Source: Octopus sinensis (lineage: Eukaryota). From it: a stretch of 64,000 bases of DNA. This document shows, piece after piece, positions 1,586 to 64,000 of the stretch. The DNA lies in assembly GCF_006345805.1 (NCBI RefSeq), contig NC_043026.1, positions 6,944,001 to 7,008,000 on the forward strand, given 5' to 3'. Numbering within the stretch: position 1 is the first letter of the stretch; each line of letters begins with the position of its first letter. The notes beneath the pieces are model-generated. The model was not told the origin of the DNA, searched no databases, and was given only the letters and a program-made list of their open reading frames with translations. The position numbers and the translations under genes are program-made.

Positions 1586-1818
1586 AAGGTGGTGAGCTGG
1601 CAGAACCGGTAGCACGCCGGGTGAAACGCTTAGCAGTATTTCGTCTGTCTTTACGTTCTGAGTTCAAATTCCGCCGAGGTCGACTTTGCCTTTCTTCCTT
1701 TCGGGGTTGATTAAATAAGTACCAGTGATGCACTGGGGTCGATATAATCAACTTAATCCATGTGTCTGTCCTTGTTTGTCCTCTCTGTGTTTAGCCCCTT
1801 GTGGGTAGTAAAGAAATA
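1586..1818 (+). mobile_element. tRNA-derived SINE family B, full length, 16-bp TSD
   Basis: aaggtggtgagctggcagaa...ggtcgactttgcctttc..ctttcgggg...aaagaaata. TSD agtattgtagtgttgc. Confidence 0.9.
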
Positions 1819-2340: not shown

Positions 2341-2408
<68 letters not shown>

Positions 2409-3792: not shown

Positions 3793-4190
3793 CTCTTTTA
3801 CTTGTTTCAGTCATTTGACTGCGGTCATGCTGGAGCACCGCCTTTAATCGAGCAACTCGACCCCGGCACTTATTCTTTTGTAAGCCCAGTACTTATTCTA
3901 TCGGTATCTTTTGCTGAACCGCTAAGTAACAGGGACATAAACACACCAGCATCGGTTGTCAAGCAATGCTAGGGGGACAAACACAGATGCACAAACACAC
4001 ACATATATATACATATATACATATATACAACAGGCTTCTTTCAGTTTCTGTCTACCAAATCCACTCACAAGGCTTTGGTCGGCCCGGGACTATAGTAGAA
4101 GACACTTGCCCAAGATGCCATGCAGTGGGACTGAACCCAGAACCATGTGGTTGGTAAGCAAGCTACTTACCACACAGCCACTCCTGCGCC
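3793..4190 (-). mobile_element. SINE family A, full length
   Basis: Ends ccactcctgcgcc. High similarity to the 53737 copy. Confidence 0.9.
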
Positions 4191-6322: not shown

Positions 6323-6712
6323 TACTCTTTTACTTGTTTCTGTCATTTGACTGCGGCCATGCTGGAGCACCGCCTTTAGTCGAGCAAATCGACCATGGGA
6401 CTTATTCTTTGTAAGCCCAGTACTTATTCTATCAGTTTCTTTTGCCAAACCGCTAAGTTACGGGGACGTAAACACACCAGCATCGGTTGTCAAGCAATGC
6501 TAGGGGGACAAACACAGACACACAAATATACATATATATACATATATACGACGGGCTTCTTTTCAGTTTCCGTCTGCCAAATCCACTCACAAGGCTTTGG
6601 TCGGCCCGGGGCTATAGTAGAAGACACTCGCCCAAGGTGCCACGCAGTGGGACTGAACCCGGAACCATGTGGTTGGTTAGCAAGCTGCTTACCACACAGC
6701 CACTCCCTGCGC
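6323..6712 (-). mobile_element. SINE family A, full length
   Basis: Same consensus. Abuts a family D2 SINE at ~6713-6945. Confidence 0.9.
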
Positions 6713-7374
6713 ATGAAATTAACATAAAAGTGGTTGAACACTCCACAGACATGCGTACCCTTAACATGGTTCTCAAGGAAGTTAGCGTAACACAGGATGT
6801 GACAAGGCTGACCCCTTTGAATTTTTGCTGGCTGAGTAGACTGGAGCAATGTGAAATAAAGAGTCATGCTCAAAGACACAGTGTCACCAGGAATTGAACA
6901 CACGACCTTACAATTGTCAGCCGAATGCCCTAACCACTAAGCAAAATGCCTCCACACACACACACAAAAGTACTATTAGCAGCAGTGTGAGGGCAATTTA
7001 ACCCTGCAATAGACGGGAACCCCATCCAGAGAGAAGTCTAGAATTCACTTTCACTTAAACACCTCACAAAAATTTGGATAAGCTCCAACACAATGAGGTA
7101 AAAAGACTTGAGACAGGCTTTCATTTTTATACATAACTATATAAACGTACATAACAGAAGCCGATTATTGATATTCTGAAGGCATTTAGTATGTAGGTTT
7201 CAAGTGGTTATGTGACAAGTTGTCAAGCAGGTACCTACCCTCTTCAGTCATTACAAGCTAAATCTAGTTACAATGCAACACACACACGCACACACATACA
7301 GGAGAGGAACATTGAGTCTGTACCATCCAATGTGTATGACATTTAAGCAAATTACTCCTCCTTTTTCCCTCCCT

Positions 7375-7479
<105 letters not shown>

Positions 7480-7504
7480 CACACACACACACACACACGA
7501 ATCC

Positions 7505-7790
7505 GCAATGGCCCAGTGGTTATAGTAGTGGACTTGCGGTTTCATTCCCCAGACTGGGCGTTGTGAGTGTTTATTGAGCGAAAACACCTAAAGCTCCTCG
7601 AGGCTCCGGCAGGGAGTGTTGGCGATCCCTGCTCTACTCTTTCACCACAATTTTCTCTCACTCTTTCTTCTATTGGCCTGCTCGCTTAGCCAGCCAGATG
7701 CCATCATTTGAAGGCTAAAACAATGCAAAGTGCACTGTAACCAGCGATGTGTAACAACATCTGATAGCCTGGTCGGTCACGGTGATCATG
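7505..7790 (+). mobile_element. tRNA-derived SINE, separate family
   Basis: Head gcaatggcccagtggttatagtagtggacttgcggtttcattcccc with A/B-box-like motifs, then a non-tRNA body. Confidence 0.55.
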
Positions 7791-7848
<58 letters not shown>

Positions 7849-8051
7849 TCACACAGGTGACAAATGGTGGTACTTTTATGAGTAAAATAGCTGAAGATTA
7901 TATTAAATGAGAGATGAAACTAAGAAATGATGTAAGTGAGACAGAGAGAGGACACAGTCCACCAGGGGGCCAGTGGCTGGAGTGTGACTGCTAGTGCTTC
8001 AATATCAATAAGTGGTCCTTTTCTGGGTCCAGAGGAGTCCCTGACTACACC

Positions 8052-8285
8052 TATTTCTTTACTACCCACAAGGGGCTAAACACAGAGGGGACAAACAAGG
8101 ACAGACATAGGTATTAAGTTGATTACATTGACCCCAGTGCGTAACTGGTACTTAATTTATCGACCCCGAAAGGATGAAAGGCAAAGTCGACCTCGGCGGA
8201 ATTTGAACTCAGAACGTAACAGCAGACGAAATATGGCTATGCATTTTGGCCAGCGTGCTAATGATTCTGCCAGCTTGCCGCCCTT
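8052..8285 (-). mobile_element. SINE family B, 8-bp TSD
   Basis: Reverse complement of family B. TSD actacacc. Confidence 0.88.
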
Positions 8286-8709
8286 ACTACACCGATACCC
8301 TAAATCCCGTCCAGGACACCTGTCTGCATAGCAGCAGCTCTTCCTCGAATTATGATATACCCCTACATTTTCTTTCCGTAGGTCTTAGAGCCAACGTGTG
8401 AACCTCGTGTGTGAATATCTCAATTTGCAGGCCTTGCTAACCCACATTCCTATGAATGTATTTATAAGCAACAACAACAACAGTAACAGCATCAAATTAT
8501 TTCAAAGCCTCGTTACAGCCAGTAATGAGGAGTGGGCAGGAGTTATTAAGTCAGCAGCTATTAAAAGGCGAATGGGGTAGGTGGGTTGGGTGGGGGTAAG
8601 ACGGTTAAATTACTCAGAATTTTCGTTTGGTATTTCTTTGAGGCAAGACTGGAGCTAAAAACTGTGGCATTTGGTTTAATCATCAGATAATGGAATAATT
8701 ACAACAGCC

Positions 8710-9000
8710 AGGACTACAATTACACACACACACACACTTTGATGCAGTTAGATAACATACATACACACACACACACAGCTGGATTAATACATACATACAT
8801 ACGTTTACAGACACTACACACACACAACCAGATATATGTATACACACACACACTTTGATGCAGTTAGATACATACACACACACACAGCTGGATTAATACA
8901 TATATACACACATTTACAGACACTACACACACACACACACAACCAGATATATGTATACACACATACAGACTTTGATGCAGTTAGATACATACATACACAC
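8710..9000. repeat. ~115-120-bp CA-interspersed tandem repeat, ~2.3 copies
   Basis: ctttgatgcagttagata x3, cagctggattaataca x2, aaccagatatatgtatac x2. Confidence 0.8.
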
Positions 9001-9003
9001 ACA

Positions 9004-9824
9004 CATGGTGCATTCCAGAAGTTTTGAGACTTTTTTTTTCTTTAGGAGAGACAGTTATAAATGTTCTAGATTATTGTAATTTTAAAATGTCGTTAGTGTA
9101 CATCAAATAAGCTGACCTGCCAACCTTTTGTTTTTCAAGACTGAAGGAAACAGCTGTAACAACACTTTGGACACACCCTGCTAAATGCTGCTGGTCACAG
9201 CTGACTGGATTTGAAGAATGCAGTCGAGACATGAAAACAATTCGGGAAATTGAGACATAATACAGTTTTATGTTAAACTGGGGAAAACCACCACAGGATC
9301 TTGTGAAGTGCTCCAGACTGGTCGTGGATAAACTTGTATGAGCTGAGCATCCGTCGCAGGCAAAGCAAGTCCACTGGGAAGCCCCTCATGATCCCCTTTC
9401 TCTCTCAAAAACAAGGGCATTGTCTAGATCCAGTGGGTTCTCTCTGACCAGATAGTCAAGAAGGGGTACTTTGTTAGGGTTTCCAGGGAATTCCTGAAGA
9501 GATTTTGTCACGTAAGGCCAGAGCATTTGCACCAGGACAATGCACCAATCCACAATTCCATTCCAGTAACCAATTCCTTGACAGAGATGGGCACCAAAAC
9601 TGTCCCCTCACCCTCCCTGCAGCCCACACCTTGCTCCCTGTGACTCCTGGTTGTTCTTTAATCTAAAAGAGAAGCTCAGGGGCAGCTGCTTTGAAAACGT
9701 TGGGGGGTGGATGTTTTGACAAGGATTTTGGATGCCTCCACTTTGTGGGGCTTCCATGGGGCCTTCATAAAGTGATGGGAACACTGCAATATGTGCACTG
9801 AAGTCAGGGGATACTACTTTGAAG
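9004..9824 (+). mobile_element. Degenerate, internally deleted mariner (Tc1/mariner) transposon
   Basis: TIR-like start ggtgcattccagaagttttgagact. Decayed transposase motifs across frameshifts: HQDNAPIH, PTLAPCDSWLFFNLKEKLRG, terminal ggatactactttgaa (cf. HDNA..H, YSPDLAPCDF.LF..LK, GDYFE). The right end is cut by a SINE. Confidence 0.8.
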
Positions 9825-10457
9825 TGTACATTATATGTACACAGGGTAAAGAGTATAGACCCCCTTCAGTCATGAATGACCATGGGATTGCATCTAGAAG
9901 GTTTCCCTCCATGGCGCAAGTCTGAGCAAGGTTGCTTATGGAAGACCAGCAGTCACCTATGGATACCAGCCACCCCCCTCCACACCATTATATGTAGACA
10001 GGGTAAAGAGTATAGACCCCCTTCAGTCATGAATGACCATGGGATTGCATCTAGAAGGCTTCATGGCACAAGTCCGGGCAAGGTTGCTTATGGAAGGCCA
10101 GCAGTTGCCTATGGATACCAGCCCCAACCCTCTCCATGCCACCGATGTTATCCAAGGGAAAGGTAAAGGGGCCGATACAGCTTGGCACCAGTGACATCAC
10201 AACTCATTTCTACAGATGAGTGAACTGGAGCAACTGGAAATAAAGGGTCTTGCTCAAGAAGACAACTGAGAATCAAACTCACAACCTCATGGGGGCCAAT
10301 CAGGCAGTACTGGCATCGACCATGCTTGAATGGTGCTTTCTATGTGCCCCTGGCATGGGAACCAGTCAGGCAGCACTGGCAATGACCTATTTAAAATTTC
10401 TTATTAAAATGACATAATTAAAAAGTGAAACAAAAAGCAAAAATGAAGAAAACTTAC

Positions 10458-10599
10458 GTTTTTTGTCGTTGCCGATAGCATCGGCTATTTTCTCTCGGAT
10501 GATGTGGCAAGCATCGAAAACGATGGTAGAAGGATCAAACTGCATTGTTTTCACTACATTGCTGCCAACAACGCTGATCTTTAGCGACAGGGTGGCCAT
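10458..10599 (-). CDS. TLN1: Talin, first coding exon (N-terminal FERM F0 subdomain), 47 codons + 1 nt, phase-1 intron follows
   Basis: Translation MATLSLKISVVGSNVVKTMQFDPSTIVFDACHIIREKIADAIGNDKK closely resembles the talin N-terminus as I recall it (human MVALSLKISIGNVVKTMQFEPSTMVYDACRIIRERIPEA). Strong Kozak context ccaaccATGG. Canonical donor AAC|GTAAGT at 10457-10452. Invertebrates have a single talin (rhea ortholog), so TLN1 is only the nearest vertebrate name. Confidence 0.93.
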
Positions 10600-10706
10600 G
10601 GTTGGGCGAAAAAAGTGGGACGGACAGCGGCAGATGAGAGTTTTCTGTTAATTCAAGTGCCGCGGCTGCGGGTTGGTGTGTCTTGTATTTTGGCAAAGGG
10701 TTTAGC
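10600..10706 (-). other. TLN1: 5' UTR part of the talin ATG-containing exon
   Basis: Acceptor tcttcttcttcctctcgttgcAG|GCTAAA at 10708-10707. In the talin frame a TAA occurs at nt 3-5 of the exon, so no in-frame N-terminal extension is possible. The acceptor implies upstream non-coding exon(s). Confidence 0.8.
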
Positions 10707-21194: not shown

Positions 21195-21690
21195 CCATCT
21201 ATCCCTGACACCACCACCACCGCCAATACCACCACCATCACCACCTCCACCATCGCCACCACCACCTCCACCATCGCCATCACCACCACCACCAGTGCCA
21301 CCACCACCACCATTTCCACCACCACCACCACCACCATCTCCACCACCATCATCACCACCACCACCAGTGCCACCATCACCACCATCGCCACCACCATCAC
21401 CACCTCCACCACCATCACCACCTCCATCGCCACCACCACCTCCAACACCATCACCACCACCATCACCACCTCCACCACCACCATCTCCATCACCACCACC
21501 TCCACCATCGCCATCACCACCACCACCATTTCCACCACCACCACCACCACCACCATCTCCACCACCATCATCACCACCACCACCAGTGCTACCATCACCA
21601 CCATTGCCACCACCATCACCACCTCCACCACGATCGCCACCTCCACCACCATCGCCACCACCACCTCCACCACCATCACCACCACCACGA
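21195..21690. repeat. (ACC/ATC)n trinucleotide tract with a 216-bp internal duplication
   Basis: catttccacc at 21311 and 21527. This tract is the source of the Pro-, Thr- and Gly-rich spurious ORFs. Confidence 0.85.
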
Positions 21691-22756: not shown

Positions 22757-23009
22757 TTTTCTACAAATGCCTTACAATTATTTCAGACACAAAGAAATTG
22801 CTCACACATACAGACACGCCACCAATTTTGCCAGCTTGCACCTTTTTAATAATAATAATAATCCTTTCTATTATAGGCACAAGGTCCAAAATTTGGGGGA
22901 TGGGGTTAAGTTGATTCCTTCGACCCCAGTATGCAACTGGTACTTAATTTATTGATCCCGAAAGGATGAAAGGCAAAGTTGACCTTGGCAGAACATAGCA
23001 ATGGCTGTG

Positions 23010-23670
23010 GGTAAAAACCCTCCTTCGGTCATGAACGACCAGGGGATTGCGTCTAGAAAACTCCCCTCTGTGGCACATCTCTGGGCAAGGTTGTTCATGG
23101 AAGACCAACAGTCACCCATGCATACCAACCTCCTTTCTCCACACCATTATATGTACATAGGGTAAAGGGTAATGACTCTTTTCGGTCATGGATGACCATG
23201 GGATTGCACCTAGAAAGTTCCCCTCTGAGGCACAAGTCCTGGCAAGGTTGTTCATGGAAGACCAACAGTTGCCCATGCATACCAACCTCCCCCTCTCCAC
23301 ATCATTATATGTACATAGGGCAAAGAAGGGTAAAGAGCCCCTTCGGTCATGAATGACTGTGGGATTCACCTAGAAAGTTTCCCCTCTGAGGCACAAGTCC
23401 AAGCAAGATTGTTTATGGAAGACCAGCAGTCATCCACGCATACCAGCCTCCCCTCTCCATGCCACTGATGTTATTCAAGGGAAAGGCAAAGGGGCCGATA
23501 CAGCTTGGCACCAGTAACGTCACAACTCATTTCTACAGCTGAGTGAACTGGAGCAACATAAAATAAAGGGTCTTGCTCAAGAACACAACATGCAGCCCGG
23601 TCTAGGAATTGAACTCACAACCAGATGACCGTAAGCCCGGTTCTCTAACCACTGAGCCAGGCACCTTCAC
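23010..23670 (-). mobile_element. tRNA-derived SINE family D with triplicated 3' module
   Basis: On the minus strand: head gtggttagagaaccgggc..gtgagttcaattcctagaccgg, body ttgagcaagaccctttatttt..ctcagctgtagaaatgagt, three ~158-bp tail units. Related copies at 9830-10300(-) and 28790-29235(+). Confidence 0.8.
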
Positions 23671-24243: not shown

Positions 24244-24998
24244 GTGCAGGTACCATAGGTGGGGACGGTCCGTGCAGGTACCGTGAATGGGGACGGCCCG
24301 TGTAGGTACCATGAATGGGGACGGCCCGTGAAGGTGCCGTGAATGGGGACGGCCCGTGCAGGTACCGTGAATGGGGACGGCCCGTGCAGGTACCGTGAAT
24401 GGGGACGGTCCGTGCAGGTACCGTGAATGGGGACGGCCCGTGCAGGTACCGTGAATGGGGACGGTCCGTGCAGGTACCGTGAATAGGGACGGTCCGTGCA
24501 GGTACCTTGAATGGGGACGGTCCGTGCAGGTACCATGAATGGGGATGGCCCTTGCAGGTACCGTGAAAGGGGACGGTCCGTGCAGGTTCCGTGAATGGGG
24601 ACGGCCCGTGGAGGTACCGTGAATGGGGACTGCCCGTGCAGGTACCTTGAATGGGGACGGTCCGTGCAGGTACCATGAATGGGGACGGCCCTTGCAGGTA
24701 CCGTGAAAGGGGACGGTCCGAGCAGGTACCGTGAATGGGGACAGCCCGTGCAGGTACCGTGAATGGGGACAGCCCGAGCAGGTACCGTGAATGGGGACAG
24801 CCCGTGCAGGTACCGTGAATGGGGACAGCCCGTGCAGGTACCGTGAATGGGGACAGCCCGTGCAGGTACCGTGAATGGGGACAGCCCGTGCAGGTACCGT
24901 GAATGGGGATGGTCCGTGCAGGTACCGTGAATGGGGACAGTCTGTGCAAAGGACAGTTCGTGCAGGTACCATGAATGGGGACAGCCTGTGCAGGTACC
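24244..24998. repeat. 28-bp GC-rich minisatellite, ~27 copies
   Basis: Unit ggtaccgtgaatggggacggcccgtgca. A 140-bp (5-unit) higher-order repeat recurs at 24501 and 24641. Confidence 0.95.
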
Positions 24999-39954: not shown

Positions 39955-40101
39955 ACACAAACAACAACAACAACAATAATAATAATAATGATGATGATAA
40001 TAATAATAATAATAATAATAATGATGATAATAATGATAATAATAATAATAATAATAATGATAATAATAATAGTAATAATGATGATAATAATGATAATAAT
40101 A

Positions 40102-40132
<31 letters not shown>

Positions 40133-40203
40133 TGATAATAATAATAATAATAATAATAATGATAATAATAATAATGATGATAATAATAATAGTAATAATG
40201 ATG

Positions 40204-40237
<34 letters not shown>

Positions 40238-40278
40238 TAATAATAATAGTAATAATGATGATAATAATGATAATAATA

Positions 40279-40309
<31 letters not shown>

Positions 40310-40419
40310 TGATAATAATAATAATAATAATGATAATAATAATAATAATAATAATGATGATAATAATAATAGTAATAATGATGATAATAATGATAATAAT
40401 AATAATGATAATAATAACA

Positions 40420-40459
<40 letters not shown>

Positions 40460-40570
40460 TAATAATAATAATAATAATAATAGTAATAATAATAATAGTA
40501 ATAATAATAATAATAATAATAATGATAATAATGATGACAATAATAATAATAATAATAGTAATAATGACTA
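39955..40570. repeat. ~600-bp (AAT/GAT)n tract with ~177-180-bp higher-order periodicity
   Basis: agtaataatgatg at 40071, 40191, 40248 and 40371. Confidence 0.85.
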
Positions 40571-40989
40571 ATTTTTTTATTCTATTTTATTTTTTAATTC
40601 TCACATCTTCATTGTCCTAATTATGGTAATTATAATGCTAATTATCATCCTCATAATTATTATTATAATTGCTAGAGTGATAAGTAATGCCTATTCTTTT
40701 ATTCTTTTACTCGTTTCAGGCATTTGACCGCGTCCATGCTGGAGCACCACCTTTAGTCGAACGAACTGATGCCAGGATTTATTCTCTGAAAGCCTAGTAT
40801 TTATTCTATCTGTTCCTTTTGCAGAACCGCTAAGTTACAGGGACATAAACACACCAACATCGACTGTCAAGCAATAGTGAGGGGACAAACAGACACACAA
40901 ATACATAAACGCACACATGCACATACACATCATGTAATCAACTGCATTAGCTTTAAGGGTATCATAAAAGGCCTGGTTGGAGGCTCAAA

Positions 40990-41143
40990 CTTCCAAGTTC
41001 TTATACAGGGCTTAGAAAAACTGAAGGACCCCTGCAATAAGTGTGTGGATCTGAGAAGGGAATATGTTGAATAGAATCATAATTAACTGATCCTCCTCTA
41101 TTTTCTTTTACCCAAAGCCAGGAACTTTTCAACACCCCCTATT
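40990..41143 (+). mobile_element. Mariner 3' end with TIR (same family as 31263)
   Basis: QGLEKLKDPCNKCVDLRREYVE* followed by ccaggaacttttcaacacccc. Confidence 0.75.
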
Positions 41144-41145
41144 AT

Positions 41146-43320
41146 ACACACACAGATGCAGGGCTTCATGGTTAGGATATTAGTCTCATGACTGTAAGGT
41201 CGTGGGTTCAATTCCCATTGGTGCATTGTGACCTTGAGCAAGACACTTTATTTCACGTTGCTCCAGTCTCCCCTCAGCTGGCAAAAGTGAGTTGTACCTG
41301 TAATTCACCAGGGAACAGCCTCGTCAAATGCTGCGTTGCGCTGAAGCTCCCAGAGAACTACATTAAGCATGTTAAGGGCACGCATTTCTGTGGAGCGCTC
41401 AGCCACTTGCACATAAATTTCACAAGCAGGCTGTTCCGTTGTTCGGACGAACTGAAAACCCTCGTCGATCACAACCAACATAGAACCAGAGTGAATACAC
41501 ACACACACAACCACACACACACACCCATACATCATCATCATCATCGTTTAACGTCCGTTTTCCGCGCTAGCACGAAATACATATACACACACACACACGC
41601 ATATATACAAGCATCATACACAAGTACACATACACACACACAACCACACGCATATATACAAGCATCCATACATAAATACATTACACACACACATACACAA
41701 GTACACACACACACCCATACACAAATACACATACACACACACACACAAATACACACACACACCCATACACAAATACACACACACACCCATACACAAATAC
41801 ACATACACACACACACAAATACACACACACACACATACACAAATACACACACACACCCATACACAAATACACATACACACACACACAAATACACACACAC
41901 ACACACATACACAAATACACACACACACACATACACAAATACACACACACACGCATATATACAAGCATCATACACAAGTACACATACACACACACAACCA
42001 CACGCATATATACAAGCATCCATACATAAATACATTACACACACACATACACAAATACACACACACACACATACACAAATACACACACACACACACACAC
42101 ACAACCCCACAGTATATAAAAAGCCTAAAAATGGATGCAGCTGCTGGTTCCTGAGACGGTCTGTAGGTGTTGCTTTAGTGTATTAGAGGGGAGGGGCGCT
42201 GTATCTGGAGGTTTGTCATTCACCCCACCACCACCACAACCACCCCGGGTACCACTGCTGCTACTACTTCTACTACAACAAACACTGACATACTTCTACA
42301 AATGCCAATGGTATTCTTAGCATTGGTATTCTTCCTCCTCCTCCATACACACTAAGTATATGTGTATATATACATAAATGTATATCTATATATAACACAC
42401 ACAGATGCAGGGCTTCATGGTTAGGATATTAGTCTCATGACTGTAAGGTCGTGGGTTCAATTCCCATTGGTGCATTGTGACCTTGAGCAAGACACTTTAT
42501 TTCACGTTGCTCCAGTCTCCCCTCAGCTGGCAAAAGTGAGTTGTACCTGTAATTCACCAGGGAACAGCCTCGTCAAATGCTGCGTTGCGCTGAAGCTCCC
42601 AGAGAACTACATTAAGCATGTTAAGGGCACGCATTTCTGTGGAGCGCTCAGCCACTTGCACATAAATTTCACAAGCAGGCTGTTCCGTTGTTCGGACGAA
42701 CTGAAAACCCTCGTCGATCACAACCAACATAGAACCAGAGTGAATACACACAACACACACACACACACACCCATACATCATCATCATCATCGTTTAACGT
42801 CCGTTTTCCGCGCTAGCACGAAATACATATACACACACACACAACCACACGCATATATACAAGCATCATACACAAGTACACATACACACACACAACACAC
42901 ACACACACACATACACAAGTACACATACACACACACACAATACACACACACACACACCACACACACACACACAATACACACACACACACACCCATACACA
43001 AATACACATACACACAAACACACACAACCCCACAGTATATAAAAAGCCTAAAAATGGATGCAACTGCTGGTTCCTCAGACGGTCTGTAGGTGTTGCTTTA
43101 GTGTATTAGAGGGGAGGGGCGCTGTATCTGGAGGTTTGTCATTCACCCCACCACCACCACAACCACCCCGGGTACCACTGCTGCTACTACTTCTACTACA
43201 ACAAACACTGACATACTTCTACAAATGCCAATGGTATTCTTAGCATTGGTATTCTTCCTCCTCCTCCATACACACTAAGTATATGTGTATATATACATAA
43301 ATGTATATCTATATATATAC
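41146..43320. repeat. Recent tandem duplication (period 1249 bp; second copy ~326 bp shorter)
   Basis: gatgcagggcttcatgg at 41155 and 42404. Unique parts are near-identical and differ mainly in the CA-rich tract. Confidence 0.9.
41158..41490 (+). mobile_element. tRNA-derived SINE family D2 (duplicated at 42407-42740; inverted copy at 6713-6945)
   Basis: Head tggttaggatattagtctcatgactgtaaggtcgtgggttcaattccc. Shares ttgagcaagacactttatttcacgttgctccag with family D. Confidence 0.75.
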
Positions 43321-43524
43321 ACACACACACACACAGGTACACAGGTATGTATTGCATCTGTTTACATATATATATATACACACACACACGTAACTATATA
43401 AACATACACATACGTATACACGTGTTCTATGGGTATGAATATAGACAATGTTGATACACGTACATACATATATAAACTTTTGTATATATCTCCATGTATG
43501 TATATAAACGTATATATATATTTG

Positions 43525-43569
<45 letters not shown>

Positions 43570-43637
43570 ATGTAGATACCTGTATCTGTGTAAGAATTTG
43601 TGTTATTTGGATTATATACACACACACACGTGTATGA

Positions 43638-43715
<78 letters not shown>

Positions 43716-43833
43716 AAGAGGGCATACATATAAATAAATATATTTAAGTGAAAAAACTGGTGTTTTTTTTCTCTTATGAAGATTTTCACACTGACTACTT
43801 GATAAATTCTTATAAAGATTTTATCCCATTTCT

Positions 43834-43883
<50 letters not shown>

Positions 43884-44904
43884 CATTTGTGTATGAATAC
43901 ACACACACATGTGTGTATGTATATATACACACACACGTATATGAACATGTGTGTGTGTGTGTGCATCCATATCTACCACCACCATCGTGATGACGGCCTG
44001 TATGCAGTCACTCACCTTCCTAGAAATAGCAGTGAAACCTCCCTTAAACCCCAACCACCAATCTTAATCTATCATGAGTACATTGTTCAATATATTCCTT
44101 GATACACACAGACAGGATGGTCAATGTTGGATTGCCCTTGATAGGGAAACCGAAAGTTAAACAACTTCATCAACATCATATATATATATATATATATATA
44201 TATGGCCACCACTACTGATATCAGTATAATTAGTGCCATGACCACCACTACTAGCAAACCATCATTACCACAAGTAGTAGTAATTACCACTACAACCATC
44301 ACTGGTGAGAAAACCACCACCACCAGCATCACAATTATCACCAACACCATTGTAACAACCACCACCACTAGGATGATTAGCACTATTGCTACCACTACCA
44401 CCAACACCTTCACAAGAACCACACCAATGCCACCACTTCACAACTACCACCAACACCACCTCCACAACTGAAGATGACCACCACTACTTCTCCACCACAA
44501 CCATCATGTCCACCACTACCACAATTACTGACACCACCACCTCCACAAAAGCAACCACTACCACCACCTCCACAACAACCATGACACCGCCCACCACCAC
44601 CACCACCATCAACTTTCTACTGAAATTCTCGCATGGTATTTCCCTTTTGCCAGAGCTGAAGCGAACACTGAGCAACCGTTCTTTGCAGCAGCAGGAGTAG
44701 CAGCAGCAGCATCGGATGCAGACAGGATACCATGCAACTGGAGGCAGACATCTGATAAACGCCAAGGAGGAAATATATCGCTAAGACATCGACATTCTTG
44801 GAGAAGTTTGAAATTATTTTTAAGTTAGTCACATCTCAGATCTTTCGTTTCAGACGGATACGTACATATGTGGATATAAATATGATATATATATATATAA
44901 ATAT

Positions 44905-45235
44905 GATGTATATGTTAGTTAGTTAGTTAGTTAATTTTTTGGCTCAAAAAGCAAAAAGCAAGGCCATGTAGGGGGACATGGAGTTATGTACAGTGTGGTG
45001 TTCATGTAAGGAGTTCAGGCCACTTGTGGTCAAGGGAGACTTTGAGCCGAGCGGTCGTCGGCATCTTCACTATCTCGTCCGGCAGCTTATTCCACGGATC
45101 TGCAACCCGGACGGAGAAAGCCCCTCTCCTTCGATTGAGATGAAATCATCGCAGATAGAGCTTTTCGGAATGACCCCGCAGCCGGCGCTCTGGAGCAGGA
45201 GTGAAGAACAGCTCTTTCGAGAGGTTATACATAAA
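44905..45235 (-). mobile_element. CR1-clade LINE 3' end, 5'-truncated
   Basis: NLSKELFFTPAPERRLRGHSEKLYLRRFHLNRRRGAFSVRVADPWNKLP. (TAAC)n tail at 44905-44935. Confidence 0.85.
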
Positions 45236-48057
45236 TATGATATATAAATCACGTAAAAACCACCCACCGATCATGGCCGTTGCCAGCCTCCCGACACGTA
45301 AAAAGAACCATCCGTACGTGGTCAATGCCAGCGCCACCTCGACTGGCTTCCGTACCTGTGGCACGTAAAAAGCTCCCACTACACTCACGGAGTGGTTGGC
45401 GTTAGGAAGGTCATCCAGCTGTAGAAACACTGCCAGATCAGACTGGAGCCTGGTGCAGCCTCCTGCCGCGACTGGCTACTGTGCTGGTAGCACGTAAAGA
45501 GCACCATCTGAACATGGCCGATGCCAGTGCCGACTGACTGGCTCCCGTGCTAGTAGCGCATAAAAAGCACCCACTACAATCTCAAAGATTCAAAGGTACT
45601 TTTTATATATATATAATGTATGTATATACATATGTATATGCACACAAACATACATACATACGCACACACACAGCAGGCTTCTTTCAGTTTCCATCTACCA
45701 AATCCACTCGCAAGGCTTTGGTTGGTCTAAGGCTATAGTAGAAGGCACTTGCCCAAGGTGCCACGCAGTGGGACTGAACCCAGAACCATGTGGTTGGGAG
45801 CAAACCTCTCTCCCTCTCACTCTGTATGTGTGTGTGTGTGTGTATACACACACGTGTATCTGTGAGTGTGTATAAGGACCCCACCCGAATGAAACAGAAA
45901 TATCTTCAAAACAAAATCCCTAAAATTCAAACCCTCCTCTTAAAAATATGTAGTCTATCTGTAGAATTCCAAAAGAATTCTAGAAACTCCAGTTGGTATC
46001 CACCCTTCAAGTACCCAGCAACACCACCCCAGTCAGCCCTCAACAGCCCTCCACCACCAGAAATACCAGGCAAAAATTCAGTAACTCTAATTTAAACATC
46101 TCCGACAAGACCTCAAAACCTAAATAAGTTATTTTATCTCTTTCAAATCTCGTTTTATCTCCTCCTGCACTTAACAGTTTAATGCCATCGTATCTTCGTT
46201 AACAGCAGTGTTTATTATTATTATTATTATTGTTGTTGTTGTTGTTGGTGTTGTTGTTGGTGTTGTCGTTGCTGAGGTCAACTTCACTTTTCGTTGTTCC
46301 AGAATTGATAAAAGTGCTGGGGTTGATGGTAAGGAATCAGACGCCGTTGAACAGCACTGAGTCGGCCGGTATTTCTTCTTCTTCAGATCTCCATGAGGTC
46401 AGCTCTGCTTTTTTTTGTCCATTTAACAAAACTGATATCCTAAAATCTAGGTTCCACATAAGATGCATTGGCATTGATGCTGGAACCATGTAAAAAGCAC
46501 TGGTGAATGGCGCTGGTGTTGGAGCCACGTAAAAAGCGCTGGTAATGGTGCCACCTGAAAAGCACGGGTGCTGGTTCCACAGAAAAGGCACTGCTGACGG
46601 TGCCACGTAAAAAAGCACTGGTGCTGGTACCACAGAAAAAAAAATCATCCGGTCCACTCTGTAAACTGGTTGGCATAGGGAAGGGCATCCAACCATTCCA
46701 ACACGGAGAACAGAGCTACGCACATTTGATGATGATGAATACAAATATCCTGAGTGGACCAATCAAGTATGTCCAAGCCTTGACCACGCCATCTGTTGTT
46801 AAGGCATAGTGCATCTAGGACTACATAATCCAATGTGTCATTTCTGGTACCTTACCTCTAAGACCAGTCCTGATCCAGCAGACCTTCAAATATGACCATC
46901 TTTTCAGATCTTAATGAAAGGCGCAGGAGTGGCTGTGTGGAAAGAAGCTTGCTTCCCAACCACATGGTTCCGGTTTCAGTCCCACTGCATGGCACCTGGG
47001 GCAAGTGTCTTCTACTATACCCTCGGGCTGACCAAAGCCTTGTGAGAGAATATGGTAGACGGAAACTAAAAGGAGCCTGTCACACACACAAACGTGTGTG
47101 TGTGTACATGTTTGCCCCCCCCCTCCATCACTTGGCAACAGATGTTGGTGTGCTTACGTCCCTGTAACTTAGCAGTTCAGCAAAAGAGGATGATAGAATA
47201 AGTACTAGGCTTACAAAGAATAAGTCCTGGAGTCAATTTCTTCAACTAAAGACAGTGCACCAGCATGGCCGTAGTCAAATGACAAACAAGTAAAAGAGTA
47301 AAATCCTCCCAGCCATGACCATCCCATCTTTTATTAAGGCATAGGACTACATTAATCAAACACATCATTCCTCTTTTTTTCCTCCTCCTTCTATTGTAAT
47401 ACAGCAATGTATGATACGAGAAAGATTTCACTGATATTTCTAGCAAATCCTATGACCAGACCACGTAGAACCGACACTTCTCTGAGTTGATTCACTTTAC
47501 CAAATGTAGGAATTCTCTGCTGGCGCTGCTCTCTAAGACTTCCATTCTTGTTTATAGTCAAATTCTGTGGCAGTCTGTTACGAAGATAAGGCAGGCACAC
47601 ACACAGGAATGGCATTTGAGATTAAATTATGTTTAAAAAGGTTATCACACGGACGATAAAGACAAGCAGCTAATGTGTGTGTGTGTATGTATATATGTAC
47701 ATATATATATATATATCTTTAACTATAAACGTGCATAATATATACATATATAAATGTATATACACGTGTGTGTATGTGAATATATATATATATATATATA
47801 TGAGTGGGTATGTCTGCATACATATATACCTGTATAAGTATATATACACGTGTATGTGTGTGTATATATATATATATATACATACACACACACACATACA
47901 TATATAAATGAACGTGTGTGCCGTAGAAACATTGCCAGATCAGACTATGCCTGGTGCAGCCTTCTGGCTTCCCAGACCCCAGTTGCATCGTCCAACCCAT
48001 GTATATATAAGTGTATATACACGTGTGTGTGTGTATATAAGTGCATATACATTTACA

Positions 48058-48815: not shown

Positions 48816-49039
48816 TAGTGGGCTTCTTTCAGTTTCCATCTACCAAATCCACTCACAAGGCTTGGGTTGGCCCAAGGCTATAATAAATGACACATCCCCA
48901 TGGTGCCATCCAATGAGACTGAACTTGGAACCATGTGATTGGGAAGCAAGCTTCTTACCACACAGCCACACCTATGTGTCTATAAATCATATTCTTTTAC
49001 TCGTTTCAGTCACTTGGCTGCGACCATTGATGCTCCGAC

Positions 49040-49560
49040 GTCTGGCAGCAGATTTGATAAACACCCACAAAATTATTAACCATCGCACCAACAACCACCT
49101 CCTCCACCTTTTTGAGCGCCATGTGTCTAACACATGTGGGCATTCCCTACAAAGTCAGGAAACAGCACAGCTCCCATGACTTTCGGAAACATTTCTTCAC
49201 ACTCAGAGTCGCTGAAGCATGGAACAAACTACCTGCATCAGTTGTTAGTTGCCGAGACACTGAATCCTTTAAATCCTCCATGCTTCCCGAAATTCGCCAA
49301 CGCTACACCTGATATTCCCACCCCACTCCATATGCATGCACTCCTGACTTTTGTACATAAGTCTATGTACCGTACATGCACCTTTAATAAGCTGTAGTGC
49401 ACCTGAGCACTGTACACAATAATTTCATTATTATAAGGTAAAACAATAATTGCAAGATTCTTTATTTGTGTGTTGAAGCATATTTTGTTGTGTCTGGGGA
49501 GAGTCAATCTGTTTTAATGCCTTATTAATTAACACACACACTGGTTCAGTTTCCACTCAT
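49040..49560 (+). mobile_element. CR1-clade LINE 3' end (second family) with 3' UTR
   Basis: GIPYKVRKQHSSHDFRKHFFTLRVAEAWNKLPASVVSCRDTESFK matches the CR1 ORF2 C-terminal motif FF..RV...WN.LP. Confidence 0.85.
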
Positions 49561-49903
49561 TTACTTAGAAGAAGAACGTAGCTCCTACAACGGTCAGAGC
49601 CAACAACTATTGAAGAAGTTGCAAGAAGCAATGAAAATTAGTAAAAAAAAAAAGTAAATGAGTGGAAATCAAACCAGTGAGTGTGTTAATTAATAAAAGA
49701 TTAACACAGAATGACTCACTTCCAGACATAACTAAGTAAAACAATACCTTTTCTCATTATAGACATTGCCTCGTATTAGTTTACCTAACTTCCTAATTGC
49801 TCAGAAGATGTTTTGTCAAACGCTTGTCTCATATAAATATACTGCAGTGCTTCAAACAAATTATTATAGTCTTTTGGTAAACAAACAAACCAGAAAAACT
49901 CAC

Positions 49904-49971
49904 CGATTCCATGTGTTAAAAGAACAACGGAATTAATAAAAGGTAGGGAAGAGCCAATTGGATGTACTCAC
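49904..49971 (-). other. Candidate recursive splice site (AG|GTGAGT) with 68-nt cryptic RS-exon
   Basis: Branch-like TCTAAT (50003-49998), tract tcgttttccttttctttcttttacAG, immediately followed by GTGAGT. A second donor TCG|GTGAGT lies at 49903-49898. Stops occur in all three frames of the 68 nt. Confidence 0.55.
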
Positions 49972-50105
49972 CTGTAAAAGAAAGAAAAGGAAAACGAATT
50001 AGATAATAGAAATATTAATTATATAGACAGGTGCAGTCTAATGACAAACAAGTAAAAGACAAAAGTGTGTATATTGTATATATGTATATAATATTATATA
50101 TATAT

Positions 50106-50178
<73 letters not shown>

Positions 50179-60279: not shown

Positions 60280-60715
60280 TAGTTAGTTAGTTAGTTAATT
60301 TGGCTCAAAAGCAAATAGCAAGGCCATGTAGGGGGACATGGAGTTAAGTACAGGGTGGTGTTCATGTAAAGAGTTCAGGCCACTTGTGGTCAAGGGAGAC
60401 TTTGAACAAAGCGGTCGTCGGCATCTTCACCATCTCGTCTGGCAGCTTGTTACACGGATCCGCAACCCGGACGGAGAAAGCTCCTCTCCTTCGATTGAGA
60501 CGAAATCGTCGCAGATAGAGCTTTTCGGAATGACCCCACAGCCGACGTTCTGGAGCAGGAGTGAAGAACAGCTCTTTCGAGAGGTTACACTTTCCGCTTA
60601 TGATGTTGTGAGCGAGAATGAGATCACCACGGCGGCAGCGTTTTTCTAGAGAATAAAGGTCGACCGTCCTCAGCCTTTCTTCATAGGACAAATTTTTGAA
60701 ACCATGAACCATGCA
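60280..60715 (-). mobile_element. CR1-clade LINE 3' end (same family as 44905)
   Basis: VHGFKNLSYEERLRTVDLYSLEKRCRRGDLILAHNIISG...RGAFSVRVADPCNKLP carries the classic CR1 ORF2 end (SYEERL, RRGDLI). (TAAC)n tail. Confidence 0.9.
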
Positions 60716-60894
60716 GGTAGCCAGCTTCTGGACTCTATATGTTATGATTCTGTATTGCGACTGTTTATATCTCGATCAGAGATATAGATAGATACATAAA
60801 TACATACATATGATGGGCTTTTTACAGTTTCCGTCTACTAATTCCATTCACAAGGCTTTGGTTGACCTGAGGCAAAAGTAGATATTTTCCCACG

Positions 60895-61173: not shown

Positions 61174-61506
61174 ACAAATACATTAAATTTGAAAAAAAAA
61201 GAATTTAAGGTGTGAGGCCCACAGAAAAACTCAATGGTTTGCACGTGGGCTGCAACCCACCTGTCACCAATACCTGTTCTAATTGCTCACCTTCTCAACA
61301 GACTAAATTTACCTGAAACCACAACACTACTGACCGAGGAAGATCTCCCTCTGTTTGTTCATGCTATTCAGTTCAATATATACTGAATTAGCCAGGGATT
61401 GGCTACAAGAGGTGTCGCAGCCCGCAAATGTACCACGGAGGCGTTTGTTCTCCGCAAGCCTCAAACCTTTTAAAATGATTTTTTTTTGTAAATTTAATGT
61501 ATTTGT
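61174..61506. mobile_element. MITE-like element with ~45-50-bp imperfect inverted repeats
   Basis: acaaatacattaaattt...aaggtgtgaggc (61174-61218) is the reverse complement of gcctcaaacctt...aaatttaatgtatttgt (61458-61506). Confidence 0.55.
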
Positions 61507-63335
61507 GGGGTGTTGGGTGGCAGCCGAGTGAATTTTAGATAATGTTTTCTGTCGGGACTAAATTAATTTTTGCACAGGTATGTCTATGTCATATACATGC
61601 AGGAGGTTATAGCCCCAGCTACTTAGTAACAGCTTGTTGAGCACTTAAATGAAATAAGATTATTTTGTGATGCTCATGTATATCTAGTTTCATCCTTGCC
61701 TCTGTGTGTGTGTGTGTGCATATCTATACTCTTACTTGTTTTGGTCATTTGACTGTGGCCATGCTGGAGCACCACATTGAAGGGTTTTTTTTTGTAGTCA
61801 AAGAAATCAACCTCAGGACTTATTCTTTGTAAGCCTAGTACTTATTGTATCGGTCTCTTTTGCTGGACCGCTAAGTTACGGGGGACGTAAACAAACCAGC
61901 ATTGGATGTCAAGCGATGGCAGAGGAACAAACAGAGACACACAAACATATACATCAATATATATGGAAAACAGATGTTAAACGAAGATGATGACGGGCTT
62001 CTTTCAGTTTCCATCTACCAAATTCACTCACAAGGCTTTGGTCAGCCTGAGGCTTTAGTAAAAGACACTTGCCCAAGGTGCCACGCAGTGGGACTGAACC
62101 TGGAACCACGTGGTTGGGAAGCAAGCTTCTTACTACAGTCTTGTCTGTGCATATATATATATATATAATGATACACAAAGTCAGGGTAGTCACAGCTGGA
62201 ATGTCTTGATCCTGTGTGGACCTGATGTGGTCTGACTAAGGGTTAAAGAACATCAACCACAAAGAACCCTTACATTCACTTTCCTCTGTCGCCCCTCCCG
62301 TCATCACTCCAGCTGGTCTCATCCCTTTCACCTTTCTCTTCTCTCTCTCTCTCTCCTTCCACCCCTGACATACACCACACCCTTATACTGCCTGCCCCCC
62401 CCCCTACCCCATTTGGTTTTTCTCTTTCTTTCCTAAGGTAATAAATAATATATTGCTATATTGAGACAGGGTGGGTGGGTCTGATATCGGACAGATGGAC
62501 GGACGGACAGGGACACACCATGGAGAGAAAGAGGGGAGAAAGAGAGAGAGAGACAGACAGATGAACACACACACACACAGACGGATAGATGGATGGTCAG
62601 ACGGACAGAGAGATGCCAGAGAGAGAGGTGAGGAGAGAGAAAGAGAGAAGGGTGGACAGACAAACAGACAGGGATATGCCCTCCACACACACACACACAC
62701 ACGGATGGACTGACAGACAGGGACATGCAATAGACACACAGACAGACACAGATGGATGGACAAACTAACACATATATGCTACAGAGAGAGAGAGAGAGAC
62801 AGACAGATGGATGGACAGACGGACAGACAGGGACATGCTACACACACACAACACAGACAGAAGGGTGGCTGGGTGGACAACACACACAGAAGGGTGGCTG
62901 GGTAGACGGACAGACAGACAATGTCTGCACGGCTGCAATGCAAACAAGGAACCTGATAAATCAATTATATTTGACATCACCACCACCACCACCACCACCA
63001 CCACCACAACTAACCCTCATCACCATCACCACCATCACCACCACCCTCAACAAGCACGGCTACAACCATCACCATCACAAACACCCCCACCTCCTTCTCC
63101 TCCACCCTTGCCATGCTGAAGCAGAGAAGCAAAGCAACAACTGCGGATGTCGATGACCATTAACCTACCCCCTACTCCCCACCCCACCAGCATCCCTCCT
63201 GAAATTACATCACCAACACCCTCAGCACCTGCAGCAACAGGAAGTAATTGTTGAAAGTGAGCTGAGAAAACCAATACTGTAATGACAACAACAACAACAA
63301 CAACAACAACACTGAGCTGAGGTAGATCTCTATTA

Positions 63336-64000
63336 GGTAGAAATAGCAGCCAAATCCTCCTCAGATCACACCCTACTGTCTTATCTATGTATATATGTAT
63401 GTATGAGCCAATGAGGGAAACCTCTACATGGTAGCTAGATCTGGTAGAAATAGCAGCCAAATCTCCCTCAAATCACACCCTACTGTCTTATCTATGTATA
63501 TATGTATGTATGAGCCAATGAGCGAGACCTCTACATGGTAGCTAGATCTGGTAGAAATAGCAGCCAAATCTCCCTCAAATTACACCTTACTCTCTATTCT
63601 ATGTATATATGTATGTATGAGCCAATGAAGGAGACCTCTACATGGTAACTAGATCTGGTAGAAATAGCAGCCAAATCTCCCTCAAATTACACCCTGCCAC
63701 TGGACTGGCTCCTGTGCAGGTGGCACATAAAAAGCACCATTTGGGGATGGCCGTTGCCAGTACTGCCTGACTGACCCTCGTACCAGTGGCATGTAAAAGC
63801 ACCCACTACAATCTCAGGGTGGGTTGTGTTAGGAAGGGCATCCAGCTGGGTGCAGCCATCTGGTTCACCAGACCTCAGTCAAATTGTCCAACCCATGCTA
63901 GCATGGAAAGCGGACGTTAAAGTGATGATGATGATGTCTTATGTATGTATATATGTATGTATGAGCCAATGAGGGAGACCACTACATGGTAACTAGATCT
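63336..64000. repeat. 107-bp tandem array of dispersed repeat family F, interrupted by a family C insertion
   Basis: ggtagaaatagcagccaaatc recurs at 63336, 63443, 63550 and 63657. An inverted array lies at 30785-31030. Confidence 0.9.

What the first reader, a model, noticed from the sequence alone, without database searches (positions are those of the whole stretch)
49898..50003. Recursive-splice-like site (AG|GTGAGT) with a 68-nt RS-exon
Seen: a branch-like UCUAAU 27 nt upstream, a near-pure pyrimidine tract, CAG directly followed by a consensus donor GTGAGT, and a second GTGAGT donor 68 nt later. The 68 nt are closed in all frames. The site sits in a non-repetitive AT-rich island on the talin strand. 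Known: this 3'SS/5'SS juxtaposition plus a short cryptic exon is the ratchet-point architecture described in Drosophila and vertebrate long introns. Inferred: a recursive splice point in a very long cephalopod intron, possibly the talin 5' intron. I am not aware of such sites being characterised in molluscs.
Basis: partly seen in the sequence, partly recalled or inferred. Interest (0 to 1): 0.75.

Follow-up and report, generated by a model that had tools for sequence, protein, structure and literature searches.

The report
Candidate recursive splice site upstream of octopus talin
About 39 kb upstream of the first coding exon of an octopus talin gene lies a sequence that looks exactly like the "ratchet points" flies and vertebrates use to remove very long introns in steps; it is far better than chance would give, but nothing available here shows that it is used.

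Summary
On the minus strand there is CTAAT (branch A at 49999), a 22/23 pyrimidine tract, and CAG|GTGAGT with the junction at 49972|49971. A 68-nt segment closed in all three frames follows, then a second GTGAGT at 49903.

Under an approximate splice-site matrix this position is both the best acceptor and the best donor on the minus strand. The real talin acceptor at 10706 ranks second. The combined score is 17.9 bits against 6.8 for the next of 426 AGGT sites. None of 400 Markov-simulated windows or 300 shuffles reached it.

The site is single-copy in the window and lies outside the neighbouring LINE tail and foldback element. The window is octopus DNA, and the gene is talin (start codon at 10599).

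T>A skew and a threefold shortage of GTRAGT on the minus strand suggest minus-strand transcription through the site. The upstream exon was not found.

No orthologous DNA or RNA data could be reached, so use and conservation are untested.

Verdict: a strong in-silico candidate for a recursive splice site with a cryptic RS-exon (about 0.4). Rivals are an ordinary 5'UTR exon (about 0.25) and an unused pseudo-exon (about 0.3). It would be a new member of a known kind.

The parts
49998..50003 (-). Branch-point-like TCTAAT (CTAAT fits CURAY); candidate branch A at 49999, 27 nt upstream of the AG
   Evidence: no AG between it and the 3'SS
49975..49997 (-). Polypyrimidine tract TTCGTTTTCCTTTTCTTTCTTTT (22/23 Y), with T at -5 and -6
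   Evidence: Only 1.0% (minus strand) and 0.15% (plus strand) of 20-mers in the window reach 19/20 Y.
49972..49974 (-). CAG of the candidate recursive 3' splice site; the top-scoring acceptor on either strand of the window
   Evidence: 12.6 bits; the true talin acceptor is second on the minus strand at 10.6
49966..49971 (-). GTGAGT directly after the AG: the 5' splice site that would be regenerated once an upstream exon is ligated to 49971 (ratchet-point donor)
   Evidence: top-scoring donor on either strand, 9.0 bits in its genomic context
49904..49971 (-). 68-nt candidate RS-exon. It has stops in all three frames and one ATG at 49912-49910. If the exon were included and joined to 10706, that ATG would open a 20-codon uORF out of frame with talin.
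49898..49903 (-). Second GTGAGT (TCG|GTGAGT): the RS-exon 5' splice site needed for exon definition. It is the only donor above 2 bits within 20-200 nt downstream.
   Evidence: 4.9-5.0 bits; the true talin donor scores 4.05
10458..10706 (-). Talin first coding exon: acceptor AG at 10708-10707, ATG at 10599, donor AAC|GTAAGT at 10457. It is the presumed target of the second splicing step, which would remove 39.2 kb (49970/49903 to 10707).
   Evidence: (homologues carry Pfam FERM_f0 and one is named talin)
61260..61402 (-). Speculative upstream exon and promoter in a single-copy island: CCAAT at 61402-61398, TATATAT at 61382-61376, then donors CAG|GTAAAT (G at 61312), AAG|GTGAGC (61290) and CAG|GTGGGT (61260). 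The putative exon has no ATG. An exon ending in CAG or AAG would regenerate a perfect 9/9 donor at 49971.
   Evidence: Inference only; there is no CpG-island or RNA support.

Best explanation
The site is a recursive splice site with a cryptic RS-exon in a long 5'-UTR intron of an octopus talin gene.

Proposed steps, all inferred from the fly and vertebrate model:

1. The 68-nt unit is recognised by exon definition. U2AF/U2 bind the CTAAT, the pyrimidine tract and the CAG, and U1 binds the GTGAGT at 49903.
2. An upstream non-coding exon is ligated to 49971. This removes the first intron segment as a lariat at about 49999 and regenerates a 5' splice site, xxx|GTGAGT.
3. The regenerated donor competes with the weaker TCG|GTGAGT 68 nt downstream and wins. 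The 68 nt and the remaining 39.2 kb are then removed together by splicing to the talin acceptor at 10706.

The mRNA would carry no trace of the site. Use of the downstream donor instead would leave a 68-nt 5'UTR insert with an upstream ORF.

What is shown: the sequence architecture, its statistical exceptionality, its single-copy status, and the talin and octopus context. What is inferred: transcription through the site, actual use, and donor choice.
For: - Exact architecture at the stated coordinates.
- Best acceptor and best donor in the window at the same position. The scoring matrix ranks the real talin acceptor second of 3039 AGs on the minus strand.
- Composite score 17.9 against 6.8 bits for the runner-up; 0 of 400 Markov windows and 0 of 300 shuffles reach it.
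- TT at -5/-6, as in 196 of 197 fly ratchet points (10.1101/006163).
- A downstream 5'SS at +68, within the under-100-nt / about-50-nt range of cryptic RS-exons (PMC6224609; PMC8605326).
- The exon is closed in all frames, as cryptic RS-exons generally are.
- The site is not part of any repeat detectable in the window, nor of the adjacent LINE tail, which ends at about 49431.
- The talin exon at 10706 starts with an acceptor and so needs an upstream exon.
- In single-copy sequence, T>A on the minus strand has the same sign and size upstream of 10706 as in the known talin intron.
- Strong donor hexamers are depleted on the minus strand only: 4 observed against 11.4 expected, compared with 16 against 13.5 on the plus strand.
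- A 39-kb segment lies within the 2.6-63.6 kb range of fly recursive segments, and recursive introns are enriched among first introns.
Against: - No RNA data of any kind were available: no junction reads, saw-tooth coverage or lariats.
- No orthologous DNA could be reached, so the hallmark conservation of the AG|GT is untested.
- The upstream exon and transcription start were not located. The median octopus intron is 2.5 kb (PMC10700109), so an intron of at least 39 kb is far in the tail, and the site could lie upstream of the talin promoter.
- The two donors are identical at +1 to +6, so donor choice cannot be predicted without the upstream exon's last bases.
- If the exon junction complex represses regenerated donors as it does in deuterostomes, the exon would be included.
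- If exon 1 is the 61.3-kb candidate, the site sits at 22% of the intron rather than near its midpoint.
- By extrapolation, tens of equally good sites could arise by chance across a 2.7-Gb genome.
Confidence: 0.4

Rival explanations
1. The unit is an ordinary internal 5'-UTR exon of talin, or of another minus-strand transcript. It would be constitutive or alternative, retained in mRNA, and merely happen to begin with GTGAGT. In the terms of Blazquez et al. it would be an 'annotated/expressed RS-exon'. Inclusion would add 68 nt and a 20-codon upstream ORF to the talin leader, which could tune translation.
For: - The signals that support recursion equally define a normal exon: a strong acceptor, a donor at +68, and a branch site.
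- Expressed exons that regenerate a 5'SS are common in deuterostomes, where the exon junction complex keeps them included (PMC6224609).
- Both donors share +1 to +6, so the downstream one is a credible choice.
Against: - An exon starting with the full GTGAGT hexamer is expected by chance in well under 1 in 1000 exons (my estimate from base frequencies).
- The donor in its genomic context scores 9.0, against 4.9 for the downstream donor.
- The exon brings an upstream ATG into a leader that otherwise has none: neither the talin exon's 5'UTR part nor the candidate exon 1 contains an ATG.
Confidence: 0.25
2. The unit is a functionless pseudo-exon that arose by chance in AT-rich, pyrimidine-tract-rich octopus DNA. 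It would either lie outside any minus-strand transcript (upstream of the talin promoter) or be transcribed but not selected for.
For: - Pyrimidine-rich 20-mers are much more common in the real sequence than in shuffles: 1.9% of minus-strand positions reach 18/20.
- Score-tail extrapolation allows tens of such sites genome-wide.
- The median octopus intron is only 2.5 kb.
- No promoter or exon evidence ties the site to talin.
- No comparable site was found upstream of talin in two other invertebrate loci.
Against: - The expected number per window is below about 0.005 even before requiring the +68 donor, the branch motif and the AG-free zone.
- The site is in the talin-sense orientation.
- Strand asymmetries suggest minus-strand transcription across the region.
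- If transcribed, an acceptor stronger than the genuine talin acceptor is unlikely to be ignored by the spliceosome.
Confidence: 0.3
3. The splice signals are carried by a transposable element, as in antisense A-rich LINE or SINE sequence that supplies a pyrimidine tract. The site would then be one of many copies genome-wide and not a locus-specific device.
For: - A plus-strand LINE 3' tail lies 470 nt away at 49025-49431.
- A MITE-like foldback lies at 49490-49730.
- A (TA)n array lies at 50077-50175.
- The pyrimidine tract is the complement of an A/G-rich run.
Against: - Homology to the O. vulgaris LINE copy stops at 49431.
- Positions 49739-50050 have no second copy in the window, even at word size 7.
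- Nothing in the 6.8 kb of O. vulgaris DNA fetched matches it.
Confidence: 0.05

Closest known systems
Drosophila intronic ratchet points with cryptic RS-exons (Ubx, kuz, Bx, luna; Duff 2015, Joseph 2018, Joseph & Lai 2021, Pai 2018)
   Same: - Juxtaposed Yn-NCAG|GTRAGT with an unusually strong pyrimidine tract and TT at -5/-6.
- A short non-coding exon closed by a second donor less than 100 nt downstream.
- A segment length of 39 kb, within the fly range of 2.6-64 kb.
- Probable first-intron location.
- The regenerated donor is expected to be the stronger of the two.
   Different: - The host is a mollusc (Spiralia), where no such site has been described.
- The donor is GTGAGT, not the GTAAGT that I recall (from memory, not checked here) as the commonest donor at fly ratchet points.
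- Conservation and RNA intermediates, which define the fly set, are untested.
- Only one candidate lies in at least 50 kb, and it is not near the intron midpoint if the 61.3-kb exon candidate is right.
Vertebrate recursive splicing through RS-exons (Sibley 2015; Blazquez 2018)
   Same: - An exon-definition unit whose first bases regenerate a 5'SS.
- Competition between the regenerated donor and the RS-exon donor.
- Inclusion would be detrimental or regulatory (here an upstream ORF).
   Different: - As I recall (from memory; that paper could not be read here), vertebrate cryptic sites lie in introns above about 150 kb.
- They are few (n = 10 per PMC6224609).
- In deuterostomes the exon junction complex represses regenerated donors, so most such exons are included. 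Whether octopus behaves like flies or like deuterostomes is unknown.
Ordinary pseudo-exons, decoy exons and poison exons in long introns
   Same: An acceptor-donor pair at exon-like spacing, with no coding capacity.
   Different: Such units do not normally begin with a consensus donor, and here acceptor and donor are the best in 64 kb and coincide at one phosphodiester bond.

Membership tests
Recursive splice site / ratchet point with cryptic RS-exon | Juxtaposed consensus 3'SS and 5'SS around a central AG|GT | tested here: met
   CAG|GTGAGT at 49974-49966. It is the top acceptor and the top donor in the window, with a composite score of 17.9 bits against 6.8 for the next site.
Recursive splice site / ratchet point with cryptic RS-exon | Prominent pyrimidine tract with TT at -5/-6 (99.5% of fly ratchet points) | tested here: met
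   22/23 pyrimidines; -5 and -6 are both T. The criterion comes from 10.1101/006163.
Recursive splice site / ratchet point with cryptic RS-exon | Second 5'SS less than about 100 nt downstream, defining a short RS-exon (about 50 nt) | tested here: met
   TCG|GTGAGT at +68, the only donor above 2 bits within 20-200 nt. The criterion comes from PMC6224609 and PMC8605326.
Recursive splice site / ratchet point with cryptic RS-exon | RS-exon content non-coding or out of frame | tested here: met
   Stops in all three frames; 68 is not a multiple of 3.
Recursive splice site / ratchet point with cryptic RS-exon | Lies in the sense strand of a long intron (at least 11 kb in flies) of an expressed gene | tested here: inconclusive
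   - It is on the same strand as talin and 39.2 kb upstream of an exon that begins with an acceptor.
- The T>A skew and GTRAGT depletion on the minus strand continue through the site.
- The upstream exon was not identified; only a speculative promoter-like island exists at 61.3 kb.
Recursive splice site / ratchet point with cryptic RS-exon | Regenerated donor at least as strong as the RS-exon donor, so that the exon is skipped | tested here: inconclusive
   Positions +1 to +6 are identical. The score is 9.0 in the genomic context against 4.9, but the real -3 to -1 bases depend on the unknown upstream exon.
Recursive splice site / ratchet point with cryptic RS-exon | Evolutionary conservation of the acceptor|donor motif above the surrounding intron | not testable with these tools
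   - No orthologous octopus or squid DNA was reachable.
- The nearest talin loci fetched (L001, L002) align only in the exon.
- The exact-match metagenome scan gave one unrelated 23-nt match.
Recursive splice site / ratchet point with cryptic RS-exon | RNA intermediates: exon-to-ratchet-point junction reads, saw-tooth coverage, lariats to and from the site | not testable with these tools
   No RNA-seq access. The protein database held no octopus talin transcript retrievable with the 47-aa exon.
Ordinary internal 5'UTR exon | Present in mature mRNA | not testable with these tools
   No transcript data.
Transposon-derived (exonised) splice signals | The site lies inside a recognisable repeat copy | tested here: not met
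   Single-copy in the window. The adjacent LINE homology ends at 49431. The foldback element spans 49490-49730.

The most novel reading that the evidence does not exclude
Octopuses, and perhaps coleoid cephalopods generally, use fly-style zero-nucleotide recursive splicing with cryptic RS-exons to process their expanded long introns. The talin 5' intron would be the first example. Ratchet-point splicing would then be documented in the third great bilaterian clade (Spiralia), and cephalopods would side with the 'cryptic RS-exon' mode of flies, not the 'EJC-protected annotated RS-exon' mode of deuterostomes.
Probability: 0.35. Interest if true: 0.55.

Novelty: new member of a known kind. Interest (0 to 1): 0.4.

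Why it matters
Recursive splicing has been characterised in Drosophila and in vertebrates. The evolutionary survey in PMC6224609 covered deuterostomes, fly and yeast, and no spiralian. I found no paper on it in molluscs.

Cephalopod genomes are large and repeat-rich and hold some very long introns, so they are a natural place to ask two questions. Is stepwise intron removal a general bilaterian answer to intron expansion? Does the fly mode (cryptic exon, always skipped) or the deuterostome mode (exon kept by the exon junction complex) apply there?

This locus gives a concrete, cheap test using existing octopus total RNA-seq and Iso-Seq data.

For talin itself, the choice between the two donors would decide whether the leader carries an upstream ORF.

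Tried and rejected
- **Orthologue search by protein.** The 47-aa talin exon found only short ORF calls from other taxa (best 85% aa). Their loci L001 and L002 align to the window only in the exon, and their 10-kb and 3-kb upstream flanks hold no comparable AG|GT site.
- **Exact-match metagenome scan.** A 22-mer across the junction found three contigs that are the same unrelated sequence and match for only 23 nt, which is a chance hit.
- **Transposon origin.**
  - The LINE tail next to the site has O. vulgaris relatives, but homology ends at 49431.
  - The site region has no copy in the window or in the O. vulgaris DNA fetched.
- **Look-ups of three window ORFs** (60362-60712, 41188-42186, 42437-43042), meant to find the window's own or an orthologous contig. 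None is on record.
- **Rfam and tRNA scans of the window.** Nothing found.
- **CpG observed/expected scan for a promoter island.** The peaks are SINE and LINE copies plus the talin exon itself; nothing is informative upstream.
- **SINE orientation bias as a transcription marker.** Both orientations occur, so it is uninformative.
- **Further talin exons in the window.** None; only exon 1 is present.
- **Searches not spent.**
  - I left unused the third large protein search and the representative-library job.
  - Gene ranges in the contig look-up appear to cover only the coding sequence, with at most 10 kb of flank.
  - Even a retrieved octopus talin would therefore not reach a site 39 kb upstream.
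- **The Sibley 2015 paper.** It could not be read; the id I tried is not held.

Full report
**1. The observation**

Read on the minus strand, the sequence is tctaattcgttttccttttctttcttttacag|GTGAGTACATCC...GGAATCG|gtgagttttt.

- TCTAAT occupies 50003-49998. Its inner CTAAT fits the CURAY branch consensus, with the branch A at 49999, 27 nt before the AG.
- Positions 49997-49975 are 22/23 pyrimidines.
- No AG occurs between the branch motif and the CAG at 49974-49972.
- GTGAGT follows immediately at 49971-49966.
- A second GTGAGT sits at 49903-49898.
- The 68 nt between them (49971-49904) have stops in all three frames.

Every statement in the finding is correct to the base.

**2. Is it more than chance?**

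- AGGTGAGT occurs five times in the window on both strands together. Only this copy is preceded by C/T and by a pyrimidine tract: 19/20 Y, against 9-13/20 for the other four.
- I scored all AG and GT dinucleotides with approximate metazoan splice-site matrices.
- On the minus strand, 49971 is the best of 3039 acceptors (12.6 bits) and the best of 5257 donors (9.0 bits). It also beats every site on the plus strand.
- The genuine talin acceptor at 10706 comes second on the minus strand (10.6 bits), which shows that the matrix has discriminating power in this genome.
- A composite score (acceptor intronic part plus donor intronic part) at all 426 AGGT sites gives 17.9 bits here and 6.8 for the runner-up.
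- None of 200 order-3 or 200 order-5 Markov simulations of the window reached 17.9; the highest was 15.7.
- None of 300 dinucleotide shuffles gave at least 18/20 Y followed by NAG|GTRAGT.
- The only donor above 2 bits within 20-200 nt downstream is the one at +68. It scores 5.0, compared with 4.05 for the real talin donor.

Real octopus sequence has many more pyrimidine runs than shuffles do: 1.9% of minus-strand 20-mers reach 18/20. A log-odds tail extrapolation suggests about 0.002 such composite sites per window. That is rare for one window, yet it amounts to some tens in a 2.7-Gb genome. The motif alone therefore cannot prove function.

**3. Context**

- **The gene is talin.**
  - The minus-strand ORF at 10599 begins MATLSLKISVVGSNVVKTMQFDPST.
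  - Its homologues carry Pfam FERM_f0, and one is named talin by JGI.
  - The exon runs 10706-10458. It has a good acceptor (ttgcag|G) 107 nt before the ATG and an AAC|GTAAGT donor.
  - At least one non-coding exon must therefore lie further upstream on the minus strand.
- **The organism is an octopus.** The window's abundant SINE family is 88-93% identical to copies on Octopus vulgaris chromosome OX597841.1. A LINE tail at 49025-49431 has O. vulgaris protein relatives at 89%.
- **The site is not in a detectable repeat.**
  - Positions 49050-50050 have no second copy in the window.
  - LINE homology ends at 49431.
  - A MITE-like foldback occupies 49490-49730.
  - A (TA)n array starts at 50077.
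  - The stretch 49739-50076 that holds the site is unique and 31% GC.

**4. Is the minus strand transcribed here?**

I could not find the upstream exon. Two indirect signals point to transcription.

- **T>A skew.**
  - In single-copy, non-simple sequence, the T>A excess on the minus strand seen in the known talin intron (1-10457) is 0.052 ± 0.022.
  - It continues with the same sign in the four segments upstream. Three are significant (0.095 ± 0.016, 0.057 ± 0.017, 0.102 ± 0.021). The last, 61400-64000, is 0.055 ± 0.049 and is not.
  - The sign holds in every 4-kb bin except 40001-44000, which holds only 94 single-copy bases.
- **Donor-hexamer depletion.** Strong donor hexamers (GTRAGT) are threefold depleted on the minus strand, with 4 observed against 11.4 expected from a first-order model. 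The plus strand is not depleted (16 against 13.5). This is what selection against cryptic donors in a sense-strand intron would give.

There is no untranscribed control region in the window, so I rate both signals as suggestive only.

A single-copy island at 61225-61700 contains CCAAT, then TATATAT 20 nt later, then three donors (CAG|GTAAAT, AAG|GTGAGC, CAG|GTGGGT). It has no ATG. If this is talin exon 1, three things follow:

- The intron is 50.6 kb, split 11.3 + 39.2 kb.
- The regenerated donor would be a perfect CAG/AAG|GTGAGT.
- The regenerated donor would clearly beat TCG|GTGAGT.

This is an idea, not a result. The CpG content there is unremarkable.

Against a very long intron, the median O. 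vulgaris intron is 2.5 kb (PMC10700109).

**5. Mechanism proposed**

The model follows flies and vertebrates (PMC8605326; PMC6224609; 10.1101/006163).

1. The 68-nt unit is defined as an exon.
2. The upstream exon is ligated to 49971.
3. The regenerated GTGAGT outcompetes the downstream donor.
4. The 68 nt and the remaining 39.2 kb are removed together by splicing to 10706.

If the downstream donor were used instead, the leader would gain 68 nt. It would also gain an upstream ORF, MESAKPFAKIQDTPTRSRGT*, that ends before the talin ATG and is out of frame with it.

**6. Comparison with the known families**

Features met:

- Central AG|GT with consensus on both sides.
- A prominent pyrimidine tract with TT at -5/-6 (196 of 197 fly ratchet points).
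- A second donor less than 100 nt downstream.
- A short non-coding exon.
- A segment size within the fly range, and the first-intron preference.

Features inconclusive:

- Location inside an expressed long intron.
- Relative donor strength.

Features not testable here:

- Conservation.
- RNA intermediates.

No defining feature was tested and failed. I therefore file it as a candidate member, not a demonstrated one.

**7. What failed**

- The protein database holds no octopus talin entry retrievable with the short exon. The nearest loci are from other taxa and share only the exon.
- A 22-mer scan of JGI metagenomes gave one unrelated chance match, present in three samples.
- Look-ups of window ORFs found nothing.
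- Rfam and tRNA scans were empty.
- No paper in the library links recursive splicing with octopus or squid. The few with 'mollusc' or 'cephalopod' mention it incidentally.

**8. Verdict**

The recursive-splice reading is the single most likely explanation (about 0.4), but it is unproven. An ordinary 5'UTR exon (about 0.25) and an unused pseudo-exon (about 0.3) remain live.

It would be a new member of a known kind in a clade where none has been described. Interest is moderate, and the test with existing octopus RNA data is simple.

Noticed in passing
window 49490-49730 (arms 49501-49566 and 49652-49717): A MITE-like foldback with 66-nt arms that are 86% complementary. As minus-strand RNA it folds at -103.5 kcal/mol (z = -15). 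It starts about 170 nt downstream of the RS-exon donor and buries another GTGAGT (49719-49714) in its stem. A partial relative lies at 4619-4702. A long intronic duplex like this could be an ADAR substrate in octopus (my speculation).
   Followed up: partly
window 61225-61700, minus strand: A single-copy island between two SINE copies, with a promoter-like CCAAT (61402-61398) and TATATAT (61382-61376). Three donor sites follow (G at 61312, 61290 and 61260). It is a possible non-coding first exon of talin or of another minus-strand transcript.
   Followed up: partly
whole window, single-copy fraction: There is a strand asymmetry. T>A on the minus strand appears in nearly every 4-kb bin (skew 0.03-0.155). 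GTRAGT is depleted threefold on the minus strand only (4 observed against 11.4 expected; 16 against 13.5 on the plus strand). This suggests the whole 64 kb is transcribed from the minus strand.
   Followed up: partly
window 49025-49431 (+); also 45005-45430 (-) and 60365-60775 (-): These are 3' fragments of non-LTR retrotransposon ORF2 tails (motif ...FFTLRVAEAWNKLPASVV...). The first has annotated 'hypothetical protein' relatives in Octopus vulgaris (P0011 and P0014, both 89% aa). The other two belong to a second family, and the 45-kb copy has an internal stop.
   Followed up: yes
window 24244-24938; 21209-21688; 23009-23459: Three tandem arrays: a 28-nt minisatellite of 24.8 copies (91% matches, 64% GC, CpG-rich), a (CAC)n-like array of about 480 bp, and a 157-nt repeat of 2.8 copies.
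   Followed up: no
window 41188-42186 and 42437-43042 (+): Two tandem copies of a repeat whose translation begins MTVRSWVQFPLVHCDLEQDTLFHVAPV..., each followed by long (CA)n-type microsatellite sequence. Neither ORF is on record in the contig collection.
   Followed up: partly
L003-L005 (JGI contigs Ga0209629_10163747, Ga0209628_10300782, Ga0209737_10152860): Three metagenome contigs from different samples carry the same sequence. It contains the 23-mer CTTTCTTTTACAGGTGAGTACAT (the 22-nt query plus one base), i.e. its own AG|GTGAGT juxtaposition in an AT-rich eukaryote-like context, and it is unrelated to the window outside those 23 nt.
   Followed up: partly
whole window: CpG observed/expected is 0.41 overall (GpC is 0.85). 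The CpG-rich spots are SINE and LINE copies plus the talin exon. This is consistent with a methylated, CpG-depleted genome.
   Followed up: no
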